From: Mantamonas sphyraenae STR306
Lineage: Eukaryota > Protista > CRuMs
NCBI GenBank assembly: GCA_026936335.1
Contig: JAPMXV010000037.1
Location: 231,503 to 295,502, forward strand
Direction: 5' to 3'
Length of the DNA: 64,000 bases
In this document: positions 24,805 through 31,954 of the stretch, piece by piece
How the letters are laid out: every line of letters starts with the position of its first letter
Position numbering within the stretch: position 1 is the first letter of the stretch
Position numbers and translations under genes: made by a program
The notes under the pieces: generated by a model
The model's input: the letters and a program-made list of their open reading frames with translations, nothing else
Databases searched by the model: none
Told to the model about the DNA's origin: nothing

Positions 24805-24915
24805 CTCTCCCTGACATCAATGAACCATCCTCCACACTCACTCCCAATTTGTTTCCCAAACGGGTGTGTGTGTGTGTGTGCACATGTGCACCCACCCCTT
24901 GCCCACCCAACAAAA

Positions 24916-27900
24916 ATGTTTGCCTCCCGTGTCACTCGTTCTTCCTACACACGCACAGGTGCACGCACGCTGGGGTTGGCTGTGGAAGCACCCCAGTCTG
25001 CACGTGCCCAAGAGGACCACGATGAGGTGCTTCAAAGAGCCCAACAGCAGGCGTTTGGCTCTGGCAGAGGAGGCGGTGGTGGTGGCCCAGGCTCTCGGTC
25101 GCCCAGCAAACCGTCCCACGGCGGCGGCTCCGTCGGCGGGTCGGGCTACTCGGGGGGTCGCCTGACTGTGTATGCAGGCAACACACAGAGCAAACGACGC
25201 ATCAAAGTGCATCCGTCGGTGGTGGGACGCAAGGAACGCAGTGAAGTGGTGTCAGGGGCCCAGGCCCTTCAGCCGCTGGATGCCTCGCAAGCAAGCCACC
25301 TCAGCGACTTTCGTTCCGACACTGTGAGCAAACCCACACGAGGCATGATGGAAGCCATGATCAACGCCCCATTGGGGGACAATGTGTATGGCGAGGATCC
25401 TGCCGTGTTGAGACTGCAGGACCGCCTTGCGGAAATGAGCGGCAAGGAAGCTGCTCTCTTTTGCCCCACGGGCACCATGACCAACCAGATTGCCCTCCGA
25501 TGTCACCTCTCTGCCCTCCAAAGGTAGGTTGCCCTTGTACCAATGCCCACCAGAATGCCTGTTTGTGTCCCGTTCTCGTGGAGGTGGGGCCGTCTGCTAA
25601 ACACAGGCTCCGGCGTTTTTTCCGGTTCCTGACGCGGCTTTCGTCTCTACTGCCCCGCGTGTGTGTGTGTGCGCGTGTGTGTGTTTGTGTGTGCGTGTGT
25701 GGTGCTCACCCTTGCCCTGGCGTGCATGTGCGTTGTTCCACAGCGTGCTGGTCGACGAGACATCCCATATTTATAACTACGAGTGCGGCGGAGTGGCGTA
25801 CCATTCCCAGGCGCAGGTGGATCCGGTGCCCCAGTCGTTGTCACGGTACCACGTGACGGCAGACGCCCTGTTGGAACGGGTGCGTGGCAAAGACCAACAC
25901 CACGCAGTGACCAAGGTGATTGCATTGGAAAACACAAAGAACGGGGTTGTGTTCCCGCAGGACGAAGTGCGTGAGATCCGACGACGGCTGCTGGGGGCTC
26001 ATCCCGACCTGGATCTCAAGTTGCACCTGGATGGGGCGCGGCTGTGGAATGCATGTGTGCGCGACAAGCTGACGTTGCAAGAGGCGTGCGAGCCGTTTGA
26101 CACCGTGTCGTGTGCATGAGCAAGGGACTGGGAGCCCCTGTGGGCTCTGTGCTGTTGGGGGACAAGGCCACGGTGGAGAAAGCCCTCCATTATCGCAAAC
26201 TGTTTGGGGGTGGGTGGAGACAGGCAGGCATGCTTGCAGCAGCAGCGGAGTATGCGTTGGATCACCAGTGGGCAAGGATGGAGGAGGACCATGCCTTGGC
26301 ACAACACCTGGCCTACAAACTCGACTCCATGGGCTTTGACATTGTGTTGCCCGTGCATACAAACATGGTGTTTGCCTCGTCGCGGCCCCTGGGTGCCACC
26401 TTTGCCGAGTTGGCAGAGCGAGTGACTGGGGCCTCTGAGTTTATGCAAGCCCATGCGGTGGTTGCGGATTTCCCACATGCGAACGAGATGCGGCTGGTGA
26501 CCCATCTGCAAACCAGTCGCCAGGCTGCAGACCAGCTGCTCCTGCTGATGGATCACATGGCCAACGGGAGGGGCTTTGACAAGGCCAAGGTGGCAGTGAT
26601 GGCACGGCAGGCTGGCATGCTGGCAGCAAGTGCACAGCGACGCAAACAGGCAGCGTCAGCATTGTCACCGTCGCCGTCGCCGTCGCCGTCATCAACATCA
26701 TTCTCGGGTCCGGCACGTGCGGGAGGGTTGCATCGTATCTACACAGACCCGCAGGCGGTGTTTGAGGCAGCCAAGGAAAAGTCAGACACACGTCCTGTGA
26801 GTCGCTTCTATGAAGAGTTTGACGAGAGCAACCTGGAGGACGTGGAGACGGCGTATGTGGAGGCGGCACACGCGCAGCACAACGGCACATGGGGCATTGA
26901 GCATTCGTCGTTGGCACAGCGTGTGGGCATGGTGACACGCTTTGCAACCGAACTGATGGCCAGGCGGGGCGAGCTGGCGGCGTTGTTGACGGCAGAGACA
27001 GGCAAACCGATCTCGCAGGCCGGGGCAGAGATTGACGAGTTTGCACGGTACATCAAACACTTTGTGGAGAGTGCACAGAAGGAAATCGACTCGAGGTTGA
27101 TGACACCGGTCAAGACGGACGAAAAGGGAGACATCCTGCTGTACGAACCAGTGGGGGTGGTGGGTAGCATCGCCTCGTGGAACTATCCGTACTTTGTGTC
27201 GGGCAACGTGCTGATCCCAGCGCTGCTGGCGGGCAACTCGGTGGTGTACAAACCCAGCGAACTTGCACTGGCCACAGGGTGGGAGATGGTGGAGATGTTG
27301 TACAAGGCCGGTGTGCCTCGCATGGCCTTGCATTGTCTGGTGGGCAAGGGCGAGGTGGGTGCAGCGCTGGCCAGCCAACCCCTGGATGCACTGTACTTTA
27401 CGGGCTCCAACGCAGTGGGACGGCAGCTGGAACGGATTGTGGAGCAACGGGAGGGTCGCAAGGAAACGCGGCTGAATCTGGAACTGGGTGGCAAGGATGC
27501 AGTGTATGTGTGTGATGATGTGGCGAGTGTGAAGCATGCCGCACGTACAGTGGCACAGGGGGCGTTCTACAACGCCGGTCAGTCGTGCTCGTCGGTGGAG
27601 CGTGTGTACGTGCACGAGGCGGTGTACAACGAGTTTGTGGCAAGGCTGGTGGACGAGGTGAGCCACTTTGTGATTGGGGAACCCGAGGACGAGGAGACGT
27701 TTATTGGACCGTTGGCACGTGGACAGGTGCATGTGAAGGAGTTGCAGAAGCAGGTGGAGGAGGCCAAACACCTGGGAGCGGTGCAGATGTGCGGGGGCAA
27801 TGCGTTGTACAGTGGGGCCGGGGGAGTGTACATGGAGCCCACAGTGATGACGCATGGCACACATGCCATGTCGTTGATGCAGGAGGAGAGCTTTGGGCCC

Positions 27901-28197
27901 GTGGTGTGTGTGCACAGGCCTGTGAGTGGGGACGAGGAGGCCGTGCAGCTGATCAACGACACTCAGTATGGTCTCACTGCAGGTCTGTTCAGCAGAGACC
28001 CCGAACGACTGTCCCGACTCACCACCAAGGTCAACACGGGCTCGGTGTACTGGAACAGCTGTGACATGAGCGAACCATGGATGCCCTGGAGTGGCCGAAA
28101 GGGATCGGGCAAAGGGGTCACCCTGTCGTACCTGGGTCAACAGGCTTTGACACGACCCAAGAGTGTGTTTGTGCGCATGAAAGGGATCACGGAATAG
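24916..28197 (+). CDS. Fusion of low-specificity L-threonine aldolase and aldehyde dehydrogenase (~1020 aa); intron 25524-25743; +1 nt needed at 26110
   Basis: Aldolase: [50 protein letters not shown], [V][12 protein letters not shown] (PLP Lys), GGGWRQAG. In the same ORF follows ALDH: ETGKP, WNYP, KPSE, FTGS, LELGGKD, NAGQSC, EESFGP. Confidence 0.88.
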
Positions 28198-28292
28198 AGA
28201 GAGAGTGTGTGGTGAGTGGTGGTGGGGGGGGGGATGTCTGCGAGGCAAACCAACAAAAACCACACACCCGGGTTCCAACGAGCAAGAAGCAA

Positions 28293-31200
28293 ATGTCGTC
28301 ACGTTCGCAGCTGGACTCGGACGTGGAGGAACTATTTGGGTCTGCGGATGGAGATGGAGACCGAGTGACGCTGGTGGGCGGAGTGGGAGGGGCCAACGGG
28401 GTGCAGGAGGACGACTTGATTGTCAGCGCAACCCAACAACGGAGGCTGTCGCAGGCAGAAGGGGCCACAGAGGAACAGGACACACGCAAGGAGAACCAAA
28501 GACAAAAGGAAAAGGGCAGAAAGGCAGGCACGGGTCGTGGAAGTGACGGTGAGTGGCAAGGGGCCGACGGGGTGAGACGACGGGACGAAGATGCGACCGT
28601 TTCTGCAAGGCCCAAGAGCACTTGTGAGGGAGATTGTGTGGGAGGGACGCGTGGTGAGGGAGAATGCGACGTACTGACAGGTGACAAACATCCACAGATG
28701 TACAATTGCATGCGCCTCTGCTTCAAGTGAGTGCTGTGGAGCGTGTGGAGGACGAGGGAAACGAGACGGAGGAGGAGGACACGTTGGATTCGCTTGTGGT
28801 CGGGTCTGCGGGTTCGTCGGGCGCAGGCGGGAGCAGGAGCAAGCAGACAGGGACACGATCGGGATCGAATGGAAGCAAACGCAGCGAAGCATCACCCAGC
28901 AACGGGGGCAATGGACGTCGTGCGTTGAGTGGTGGGTTTGGCGGGTTTGGAGGATTTGGTGGAGGAAGTAGCAGCAGCAGCAGCAGTGGTGGCAGCAGTG
29001 GCAGTGGTGGTGGTACGGGTGCTGGCAACAACCGAGTTGCACCTGTGAATGGAGGGAGTGCAGGGTTGCAACGGATGATGACAAAGCACAGTCTGAAGTT
29101 CAAGACGTTCAGCACGTTCACGGTGGATCACGACGAGGACGCACAGCAGTCGTCGGGGTCACTGCTGGGGGGGCTCATGCATGGATCATTGTCGACCAAG
29201 GAACAGCATGGACATGGTGGGACGACCCAACAGCCACACCGTGCACGTGAGGAGGAATATGGTGTGTTTCAATTCCGAGCACGGCATCGGTACACCCGAA
29301 GCAGCAGCAGCAGCAGTGAGGAGGGTGTGGAAGTGGTTGGGGCAGCGTCACGTGAGGTGGGCACCCCATCGCATGCATTGAGTGTGGTGGAACGACGCAT
29401 GGCACAGGAGTTGTTGGACACTTTGACGGAGGAGCAGGTGAAGCTGTTGTACCTGGTGTCGTTGTATTCGTACAAGGCAGTGGCCAAGGGGGAGAGTGAA
29501 GAGTGGATTCGCAAGGTGCCTCTGTTGGTGCTCATGTACGAGGGGGTGGTGGCAAAGACGTTTGACTACGACTACGCCCCTGCCTCGGAGATGGTGGGCA
29601 ATCGTCGCATCTACCTCAACATTCCGCAGGATGGTGTGGATGACTTGGATGACCTGCGTGAACAGAAGCTGCTCAATGGTCTCAAGTTGTCCTCCTCCGA
29701 GTACCAAACCGTGACGGCATACCAAATCTCCGACCTGGGCCTGGATGTGTTGTCGCTGGCACCCACGCGCTTGTTCCAGGCCGTGGACGACCTGGTGTAC
29801 CATCGCTTTGTGTGGCGAGAGGTGACGGATGCATGGAAGCGACATGCAGAGGTCAACCACCTTGCCTACGTGCCCCCAGCAACCTGGGCGAGGAGTTTGA
29901 CGAGACGGATGGGAAGGAGCATCGAGAGCTCGTGGAGGTGTTGTGGGACGCAGCCGACGCCTCGTTCTACCTGCGAGGCACAACCACAGACTTTACGTGT
30001 CTGTCATCCATCACAGACACGGAGGATGTGTCGTATGTGGCGTCGCCGTTCATTCCGTCGCACTTGCGCCGCGGAGGGAGGGCGACGACGTCGTTTCGGC
30101 ACCGTGCGGCGGAAGCAAGTGCAGGGGCAGCCAACATTCGGGACGACCTGCAAGAATTGATCAAACTGGACGAGGTGGTGTTTATGGTGGGCGAGTGGGT
30201 GCCGTTCGGGGCCAACCAGATTGTGTTGTTGAACGACAAGCTGGGTGCGCCGGACAGGGTGCGTGGTGGGTTCTTTACGGCGCTGGTGGACGAGGAGCCC
30301 GAAGGAACCAAGTTTCGGATTCCCAACAACACACAGGGCTTGACTTCGGTGGAGGTGTTGGACTTTGACCAAACGGAGTACCTGAACTTTGAGGCGGAGA
30401 TCAAGCTGCCTGTGGAGGAGGGGGTCATCCAGGTGGAGAACTTTGGGGTGCACGTGTCGGCCACAGGCGAGATTGTGTACGGGTTGGCCATCGAGTCGCT
30501 GCAGGACAAGGTTGGGAACAAGATCTCGATGGATCTGCTGTCGCGTGTGATTGTGGACATCCACAAGGACTCGTCGCAGGTGATGGACTCGCTGGTGAGT
30601 GCATACCAACGCTCGCTGATGGACACAGTGTACTCTGGGGACAGTGCGTCGCGAGACAAGTTCCAGGTGATCATGGCGAAGCGGATGCATCCGAAGAAGG
30701 CGGCTGAGGAGTATCTGGACAAGGAGGACTTTGAGAATGAGTTGAAGCAGGTGTTGGGAGAGACCCAGAGTGCACACGACCTTTCGGAGGACGAAATGAT
30801 TGTGATTGGACGGCACGGGATCCTGCTTGTGAGCGAGGACGCCGAACGGTTTGCGGAGTATGTGCACGCACACATGACACTGGCAGCGCTGGGACTGTTC
30901 CTGCGCAACCTGTTCAACCGCATCTTTATCCTGGACGACCAGCTCAAGCGGATCCGGGAGCTGATCCAGACGTACGAACAGAACCCGAACAGCATCCCGC
31001 GGATCAGGGAGATGTTGAGCCAGAATTCGAGGTATGTGATCCTGCTGGAGACGGCACACGGGTACATGCAGGAGGCCATGCGCACGTTTGACGTACCCAA
31101 GGCACCTGGGAGCAGCCAGGTGAGTGCAGACGAGGCGCTGGGCACGCTGTACAAGGTGTTGCGGCTGGAACAGCACGAGAGCCAGCTGCGTCGCAGGGTG

Positions 31201-31954
31201 GAAGATCTGGACAAGAATCTGGAGGGGGCTCGGTTCGAACTGGATGGGTTGCGTGAGATGACAGATGTGATTTCGGAAAACACAGATGTTCCGTCTTCAG
31301 GAGGCGATGAACAGCAACACGAAGAATCTGGAGGAAGTGTTTCGGTCGAACGAACGGTCGTCGGCGTCGCTGGAGCTGATGCAGGTGATTCTGTCGGGCA
31401 CACTGGCGTTTGACATCATGGACCGGTTCACAGGCGAATGGACGGTGATGGACCAGGAGTGGGCGGAGCGGGATGGGATTGTGTCGTTTGTGACGACGCC
31501 GTACGTGTGGTTTGTGGTGTCACTGGCCGTGTGGGCACTGGTGGCGGGTTTGCTGCTGTACTACATGCGGTATGCACAGACTCGTGCGGGAGGCGTGCTG
31601 ACGGTGCGTTTCAAGGTGAACCGACCGATTCGGGTGCGCAACCTGAACAATTATTTGCGGAACAAGCCGATTGCGGAGGAAGGGGTGGAGAACGACGGAC
31701 ACAATTCGATCAAAAAGGTGTCATGGACAGAGGTGGATGGAGAGTACTGGAGCAACTGCCTGCCGCAGATCGAGATTGCCTACGACGAAAAGTACGGGTT
31801 CCTGCTGCATGTGTACATGCAAATCACCAAGGACAAGTATCTGCTGAGCGAACGGGAGATCAAGCGGAGGTTCTTGAATGATCTGCGCAACTATGAGGTG
31901 TTGGAGGAGGTGCATGGGGAGGGTGGGGATGCCAAGCGCAGGGGAGGGCATTGA
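28293..31954 (+). CDS. Uncharacterised protein: low-complexity N-terminus, globular core, coiled coil and two C-terminal TM helices (CorA-like topology); intron ~28549-28697; frame breaks at ~29872 and ~31280
   Basis: Consecutive overlapping ORFs 28706-30160, 29812-31413 and 31286-31954 have protein-like composition (WIRKVPLLVLMYEG..FDYDYAP, GEWVPFGANQI, LSGTLAFDIMDR, VWFVVSLAVWALVAGLLL). Confidence 0.7.

What the first reader, a model, noticed from the sequence alone, without database searches (positions are those of the whole stretch)
24916..28197. Threonine aldolase fused to an aldehyde dehydrogenase: possible acetaldehyde-channelling enzyme
Seen: the aldolase C-terminal half, a Ser/Pro linker and a complete ALDH lie in one uninterrupted ORF (26110-28197). 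Both active sites look intact (PLP Lys in SKG; ALDH Asn in WNYP, Glu in LELGG, Cys in GQSC), and the N-terminus resembles a mitochondrial presequence. Established: L-threonine aldolase yields glycine plus toxic, volatile acetaldehyde, which is an ALDH substrate; aldolase-dehydrogenase channelling is known in the unrelated bacterial DmpFG pair. The GGKD and C-terminal GVTLS motifs resemble a poorly characterised bacterial/fungal ALDH clade. Inference: a single mitochondrial enzyme converting Thr to Gly plus acetate and NAD(P)H. I do not know of a described natural fusion of this type.
Basis: partly seen in the sequence, partly recalled or inferred. Interest (0 to 1): 0.85.

Follow-up and report, generated by a model that had tools for sequence, protein, structure and literature searches.

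The report
Fused aldolase-dehydrogenase, likely carnitine synthesis
The marine flagellate Mantamonas has joined a threonine-aldolase-type enzyme and an aldehyde dehydrogenase into one expressed protein, which most likely carries out two consecutive steps of carnitine synthesis rather than the acetaldehyde clean-up first proposed.

Summary
The fusion is real. The gene (24916-28197, one 220-nt intron) encodes about 1020 aa. An RNA-like run splices the intron, supplies a base the assembly lacks at 26108, and crosses the aldolase-linker-ALDH junction in one contig. The genome matches Mantamonas sphyraenae, and Mantamonas plastica has the same in-frame junction. No other such fusion turned up in the protein or paper searches.

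The genome's only TMLD-like and BBD-like genes (carnitine steps 1 and 4) lie 37-47 kb upstream on the same 295-kb chromosome. GLY1/Tha1-type aldolases are known HTML aldolases (step 2), and no ALDH9/10 was found for step 3. The ALDH nests among bacterial gamma-glutamylation-operon enzymes, but has lost three near-invariant pocket arginines and gained Tyr, Trp and two Glu, which suits a cationic aldehyde such as TMABA.

Best reading: a bifunctional HTML aldolase/TMABA dehydrogenase (0.62). Threonine/acetaldehyde remains a rival (0.2). No activity was measured and channelling is untested. An earlier scan note flagged the TMLD+BBD neighbourhood but did not link it to this gene.

The parts
24916..25523 (+). 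Exon 1: ATG, presequence-like N-terminus, Gly/Ser-rich spacer, start of the aldolase domain
24916..24990 (+). Possible mitochondrial presequence (Arg/Ser/Thr-rich); judged on composition only
25306..25523 (+). Aldolase domain, N-terminal part (PF01212 1-68), with the RSDT motif and Y158 (equivalent to mouse Tha1 Tyr69)
25524..25743 (+). Intron, 220 nt, GT..AG, phase 2; spliced out in a contig of run X3
25744..28197 (+). Exon 2: rest of the aldolase, linker, whole ALDH, stop codon
26108..26108 (+). Assembly error: one base missing, giving an apparent frameshift; run X3 has an extra C here
25744..26560 (+). Aldolase middle and C-terminal part: H211, H255, D299, R302, PLP lysine K330 (26122), R453
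26575..26799 (+). Interdomain linker, about 75 aa, with a Ser/Pro run at 26656-26712; shorter and without the run in M. plastica
26800..28194 (+). ALDH domain: catalytic N683, E783, C818; K-P-S-E cofactor motif (E709, NAD+-type by established rule)
27037..27051 (+). Substrate-channel helix changes: E635 (Gly/Ala/Ser in all 120 relatives) and Y639 (Arg in 120/120); both shared with M. plastica
28060..28089 (+). Substrate-channel loop changes: M978 (Arg in 120/120), E980 (Ser in 120/120), W982 (Arg in 111/120); W985 kept (equivalent to spinach BADH W456)

Best explanation
One polypeptide performs steps 2 and 3 of carnitine biosynthesis. [quoted passage not shown] The tethered NAD+-type ALDH oxidises TMABA to gamma-butyrobetaine. 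TMLD upstream and BBD downstream in the pathway are encoded on the same small chromosome. The ALDH was probably taken from a bacterial amine gamma-glutamylation operon, and its pocket changed from binding an acidic glutamyl tail to binding a cation. The fusion most likely gives co-expression, co-targeting and proximity rather than a closed tunnel. Shown: the fusion, its expression, its presence in two species, the gene inventory, the linkage and the substitutions. Inferred: substrates, location, the effect of the substitutions on the pocket, and gene transfer.
For: (1) The only TMLD-like gene (C37:208466-209631) and the only BBD-like gene (C37:218759-219911) in 25 Mb lie on the fusion's contig (fusion at C37:256418-259699). 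Each prefers its own model: TMLD 214 vs 157 bits; BBD 247 vs 201 bits. Both have the N-terminal Cys motif. The idea was noted before this result was read. Chance that a given gene lies this near is 0.34%, or 0.7% for either of the two aldolases.
(2) Mouse Tha1 prefers HTML about 1000-fold over L-threonine, and a Candida GLY1 paralogue is an HTMLA (PMC11016064). The fused domain falls in a mainly eukaryotic clade with fungal GLY1-type enzymes (support 100) and keeps the Tyr69 equivalent.
(3) Among 12 ALDH genes none is an ALDH9/10/BADH orthologue; the best BADH score is 342 bits against a cut-off of 669, from an ALDH8-like gene.
(4) Pocket changes R>Y639, R>M978, R>W982, G/A>E635, S>E980 against 120 nearest relatives. 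Y684 and W985 align with spinach BADH Y160 and W456, which bind trimethylammonium (PMC4046141).
(5) A gamma-glutamyl-aminoaldehyde dehydrogenase (PauC) oxidises TMABA well (PMC12006823). TMABADH has been recruited from different ALDH genes (PMC8085414).
(6) Four carnitine acyltransferase genes show that carnitine is used.
Against: No enzyme was assayed. The cluster is loose: about 18 unrelated genes lie between BBD and the fusion, and with all 13 aldolase/ALDH loci as candidates the chance of one lying this near is 4.3%. The TMLD and BBD hits are below the curated cut-offs. The mouse Tyr168 equivalent is His here, as in most family members, so the aldolase shows no HTML-specific signature. Two SHMTs and a second aldolase could also cleave HTML. 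The second aldolase has an altered PLP-phosphate motif, so it may not cover ordinary threonine cleavage. The genome also lacks an ALDH1/2, so an acetaldehyde role is open. Y684, Y812 and W985 are inherited from the bacterial clade, not new. The spatial positions of the substitutions were inferred from alignments, not measured on coordinates.
Confidence: 0.62

Rival explanations
1. One reading: L-threonine or allo-threonine is cleaved to glycine and acetaldehyde, and the fused ALDH removes acetaldehyde as acetate, in mitochondria.
For: The aldolase is a canonical low-specificity threonine aldolase type. No ALDH1/2 was found, so acetaldehyde needs another sink. Loss of the arginines could simply mean loss of the glutamyl substrate. 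The standalone aldolase looks degenerate at the PLP-phosphate motif.
Against: It does not explain linkage to TMLD and BBD, or the gain of two acidic and two aromatic residues at channel positions. It leaves carnitine step 3 without a candidate. Mouse Tha1 is a poor threonine aldolase.
Confidence: 0.2
2. The pair acts on another beta-hydroxy amino acid with a cationic side chain (for example 3-hydroxy-lysine or a hydroxy-arginine derivative), producing glycine and an omega-amino acid.
For: The same pocket argument applies. The best solved-structure matches are broad aminoaldehyde/betaine-aldehyde dehydrogenases. The aldolase family is promiscuous.
Against: No second hydroxylase was identified. 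The TMLD-like gene supplies HTML directly and is linked.
Confidence: 0.1
3. Neutral fusion of neighbouring genes in a compact genome, the two domains working in unrelated pathways; for example the ALDH still acting in ethanolamine gamma-glutamylation, or being made separately from an internal start.
For: Genes here are about 100 bp apart. The linker has an Arg-rich, acid-free stretch after M489 that resembles a presequence. Contig depth steps from 131 to 234 at 26214.
Against: The fusion is kept in two species whose ALDH domains are only about 61% identical. The M. plastica linker lacks the presequence-like stretch. The arginines typical of the operon enzymes are gone. No operon-type Fe-ADH was found, and the two glutamine-synthetase-like genes are ordinary GlnA.
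Confidence: 0.07
4. Assembly artefact: a missing stop codon or misassembly joins two genes.
For: The assembly has an indel error in this very gene, at 26108.
Against: An independent short-read contig crosses the junction with no gaps, and a second species has the same in-frame junction.
Confidence: 0.01

Closest known systems
HTML aldolase: mouse Tha1 (PDB 8PUM) and the Candida albicans GLY1 paralogue (PMC11016064)
   Same: Same family (PF01212) and same catalytic set (PLP Lys, stacking His, Asp/Arg); Tyr69 equivalent kept; TMLD and BBD present in the genome.
   Different: Those are standalone proteins; here the aldolase is fused to an ALDH. The Tyr168 equivalent is His.
TMABA dehydrogenases: animal ALDH9A1, Neurospora NCU00378 (PMC8085414), plant ALDH10 aminoaldehyde dehydrogenases (PMC4046141)
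   Same: NAD+-type ALDH; Tyr/Trp pair at the trimethylammonium site; Glu at the position of the second acidic helix residue of the plant enzymes.
   Different: Not an orthologue of any of them (about 33% identity to ALDH10; 265 bits against a BADH cut-off of 669). The Trp167 position of spinach BADH is Asn.
Bacterial ALDHs of amine gamma-glutamylation operons (ethanolamine pathway type; PMC6529630, PMC10132767)
   Same: Nearest sequences (43-49% identity); the fused ALDH nests among them; six of seven relatives checked sit beside a glutamine-synthetase-like gene and an Fe-ADH, three of them with peptidase C26 as well.
   Different: Three near-invariant arginines are replaced; partner genes were not found in Mantamonas; fused to an aldolase. 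That these relatives act on gamma-glutamyl-aminoacetaldehyde is inferred from operon layout, not tested.
DmpFG/BphIJ aldolase-dehydrogenase channelling complex (from own knowledge)
   Same: An aldolase makes an aldehyde that a partner dehydrogenase consumes.
   Different: Unrelated folds (metal-dependent class II aldolase, acylating dehydrogenase), two chains with a buried tunnel; here a PLP aldolase and a non-acylating ALDH on a flexible linker.

Membership tests
Low-specificity threonine aldolase family (GLY1/Tha1/LtaE, PF01212) | PF01212 over its full length | tested here: met
   Three pieces cover 1-68, 75-193 and 195-283 of 288, each over the cut-off
Low-specificity threonine aldolase family (GLY1/Tha1/LtaE, PF01212) | PLP Lys, stacking His, Asp/Arg pair, second His, C-terminal Arg | tested here: met
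   K330, H211, D299/R302, H255, R453
HTML aldolase (function) | Aromatic residues contacting the trimethylammonium group (mouse Tyr69, Tyr168) | tested here: inconclusive
   Tyr69 equivalent is Tyr but is aromatic in most family members; Tyr168 equivalent is His
HTML aldolase (function) | Cleaves HTML to glycine and TMABA | not testable with these tools
   needs an assay
Carnitine biosynthesis pathway | TMLD and BBD present in the genome | tested here: met
   One gene each, each preferring its own model, though below the curated cut-offs
ALDH superfamily (PF00171) | Full domain with catalytic Asn, Glu and Cys | tested here: met
   E 3e-114; model pLDDT 91.8; TM about 0.87-0.90 to solved ALDHs
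ALDH9/ALDH10/BADH (canonical TMABA or betaine aldehyde dehydrogenases) | Score above the family cut-off, or orthology | tested here: not met
   TIGR01804 265 bits against 669; nearest relatives are a different clade
ALDH1/2 (canonical acetaldehyde dehydrogenases) | Close similarity to ALDH1/2 | tested here: not met
   About 30% identity to human ALDH2 and ALDH1A3 in the fold search, no better than other families
Gamma-glutamylation-operon ALDH clade | Phylogenetic placement in the clade | tested here: met
   Nested in a 32-row clade, SH-aLRT 99; operon context
Gamma-glutamylation-operon ALDH clade | Conserved pocket arginines and operon partners | tested here: not met
   All three Arg replaced; partner genes not found with the queries used
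Channelling aldolase-dehydrogenase (DmpFG-like behaviour) | Enclosed tunnel, or aldehyde protected from bulk solvent | not testable with these tools
   No full-length or oligomer model; the linker end is low-confidence

The most novel reading that the evidence does not exclude
The first natural bifunctional HTML aldolase/TMABA dehydrogenase: a eukaryotic GLY1/Tha1 aldolase fused to a bacterially derived ALDH whose pocket changed from anion- to cation-binding, with all four carnitine-synthesis steps on about 51 kb of one chromosome in a lineage that branches at the base of Amorphea.
Probability: 0.55. Interest if true: 0.82.

Novelty: new variant of a known kind. Interest (0 to 1): 0.72.

Why it matters
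If the carnitine reading holds, the fusion is independent evolutionary evidence that GLY1/Tha1 aldolases are the HTML aldolases, the step of carnitine synthesis that stayed without a gene longest. It would extend the pathway, described as mainly opisthokont (PMC11016064), to CRuMs. It gives a first testable substrate for a derived member of a large uncharacterised ALDH clade, with a clear set of residue changes to test. It also offers a single-gene HTML-to-butyrobetaine module for carnitine production, where the aldehyde intermediate is reactive. If threonine is the substrate instead, it remains an undescribed aldolase-ALDH fusion conserved in the genus.

Tried and rejected
- An intron at 26108: candidate GT/GC..AG pairs would delete conserved residues; reads show a one-base insertion instead.
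- Other fusions: none among 120 aldolase hits of 382-1216 aa, the top 120 ALDH hits, the 150 best representatives apart from M. plastica, long ALDH hits checked by Pfam, a 1-400 region search, JGI metagenomes or the ESM Atlas.
- Papers: none describing the fusion. Strijbis 2009 is not held. My recollection that the Candida HTMLA and TMABADH genes are adjacent (orf19.6305/6306) could not be verified; one review gives orf19.6306 as the aldolase.
- The rRNA search failed; the organism was identified from assembly size, contig count and GC.
- Retained ethanolamine pathway: rejected.
- A tight gene cluster: rejected; the intervening genes are unrelated.
- The careful aldolase tree timed out; FastTree was used. 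Both Mantamonas aldolases have long branches, so their exact places are unsure.
The joined protein was built only inside scripts, with X at the assembly break, and was not sent to any search or folding tool.

Full report
Gene structure. The gene starts at ATG 24916. Exon 1 ends at 25523, a 220-nt GT..AG intron spans 25524-25743, and exon 2 runs to the stop at 28197. Pfam PF01212 is covered in three pieces (1-68, 75-193, 195-283 of 288), followed by PF00171 22-461. In the assembly the second and third aldolase pieces are out of frame at 26108. A contig of run X3 has one extra C there and splices the intron exactly. With X at that break the model is 1020 aa with no internal stop. The joined protein was used only inside scripts; all searches were made exon by exon, by reference.

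Is the fusion real? Run X3 behaves as RNA: it is spliced, and it shows a poly-A tail at 24840 for the upstream gene. One of its contigs covers 26215-28233 without gaps, across the aldolase end, the linker and the whole ALDH; contigs end at gene boundaries, not in the linker. A contig cannot prove a single transcript, but there is no stop between the domains. The genome (25,061,354 bases, 78 contigs) matches the Mantamonas sphyraenae assembly (25.06 Mb, 78 contigs, GC 59.19; PMC10492846). A representative-protein search found P0242, the only fetched protein that matches both domains. It is Mantamonas plastica P029143. It holds the aldolase C-terminus, a shorter linker and the first half of the ALDH in one frame, 46% identical overall; it appears to be a partly spliced fragment. 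The fusion is therefore shared by two well-diverged species.

Is it known elsewhere? No other protein with both domains appeared in three homologue searches, the representative search, the metagenome scan or the ESM Atlas. No paper describing it was found. These searches have limits, so 'not found' is the claim.

The aldolase domain. All catalytic residues are canonical. It falls with fungal and protist GLY1-type enzymes in a 47-row clade (support 100, FastTree, long branch). The genome has a second, standalone aldolase on C29, with an altered PLP-phosphate motif and Met at the mouse Tyr69 position. Members of this family are established HTML aldolases: mouse Tha1 prefers HTML about 1000-fold over threonine, and a Candida GLY1 paralogue is HTMLA (PMC11016064). 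The fused domain keeps the Tyr69 equivalent but has His at the Tyr168 position, like most of the family, so its own sequence does not decide the substrate.

The ALDH domain. Its nearest relatives are standalone 449-478 aa proteins at 43-49% identity, bacterial where named. Six of seven checked lie in operons with a glutamine-synthetase-like gene and an Fe-ADH, three of them with peptidase C26 as well. This layout matches the ethanolamine gamma-glutamylation pathway (PMC6529630; PMC10132767); the match is by layout, not by testing orthology. Both Mantamonas ALDHs are sisters (99) nested in this clade (99) and are far from the genome's other ALDHs, which suggests transfer from bacteria; the taxonomy of most rows is unknown, so this stays an inference.

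In 120 nearest relatives, three substrate-channel positions are Arg (120, 120 and 111 of 120). The fusion has Y639, M978 and W982 there, and gains E635 (Gly/Ala/Ser in all 120) and E980 (Ser in all 120). E635 and Y639 are shared with M. plastica. Y684 and W985 align with spinach BADH Y160 and W456, which form the trimethylammonium pocket, but these two are inherited from the clade. The change from basic to aromatic and acidic suits a cationic aldehyde. Assigning these positions to the channel rests on alignment and on my knowledge of ALDH structures; the AlphaFold model (pLDDT 91.8) gave no coordinates to measure. PauC shows that a glutamyl-aminoaldehyde dehydrogenase can oxidise TMABA well (PMC12006823). 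The operon partners were not found in Mantamonas.

Pathway context. After noting the carnitine idea, I searched the genome for TMLD and BBD. Each is single-copy, and both lie on the fusion's own 295-kb contig, about 47 and 37 kb upstream, just outside the window. Each prefers its own model and has the N-terminal Cys motif, though both score below the curated cut-offs. The chance that a given gene lies this close to them is 0.34%; it is 0.7% for either aldolase and 4.3% for any of 13 aldolase or ALDH loci. About 18 unrelated genes intervene, so this is linkage, not an operon-like cluster. The 12 ALDH genes include ALDH3, 4, 6, 7 and 8-like types but no ALDH9/10 and no ALDH1/2. Four carnitine acyltransferases are present.

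Mechanism. TMLD makes HTML. The fused aldolase cleaves it to glycine and TMABA. The tethered ALDH oxidises TMABA with NAD+ to gamma-butyrobetaine, and BBD makes carnitine. The N-terminus looks like a mitochondrial presequence by composition only. The linker is about 75 aa, differs between the species and is low-confidence in the model, so proximity and co-regulation are more likely than a tunnel. I put this reading at 0.62, threonine/acetaldehyde at 0.2, another cationic beta-hydroxy amino acid at 0.1, unrelated domains at 0.07 and artefact at 0.01. The first two are not exclusive, since these aldolases are promiscuous.

Verdict. Both domains belong to known families and the pathway is known; the fusion, the source of the ALDH and its pocket changes appear undescribed. 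New variant of a known kind, interest 0.72.

Noticed in passing
G000:C37:219920-221751 (L031:4920-6751, minus strand): A Rubisco-LSMT/SETD3-like protein with a Rubis-subs-bind domain lies tail-to-tail with BBD; such methyltransferases make trimethyllysine. No SET domain was detected by Pfam.
   Followed up: partly
L001:1255-2379 (G000:C29), minus strand: The standalone threonine-aldolase paralogue has an unusual PLP-phosphate motif and lacks two aromatic pocket residues; it may have a different substrate.
   Followed up: partly
window 26220-26240 and about 26607-26627: The linker holds a 21-nt, 19/21 copy of an aldolase-internal stretch (RQAGMLA), absent from the M. plastica linker; borderline against shuffles (score 34, shuffle maximum 35 of 500).
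   Followed up: partly
window 26213-26215: The RNA-like contigs break here with a depth step from 131 to 234; 3' bias, an allele bubble or a shorter transcript cannot be told apart.
   Followed up: no
G000 whole genome: No ALDH1/2, ALDH9/10 or clear ALDH5 orthologue was found among 12 ALDH genes; the C17 and C41 ALDHs are near-identical duplicates.
   Followed up: partly
L041:1117-2445 and L042:1469-2287: Two bacterial-type (type I, GlnA) glutamine synthetases in this eukaryote.
   Followed up: no
window 28706-31951: The large downstream gene has no Pfam match and shows frame changes near 29872 and 31283, possibly further assembly indels or introns.
   Followed up: no
P0004, P0009, P0011: Threonine aldolase fused to PF06108 in Acrasis and two metagenomic proteins: another recurring aldolase fusion.
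   Followed up: no
P0244, P0273: ALDH hits fused to a peptidase C26/GATase domain, consistent with the gamma-glutamylation context.
   Followed up: no
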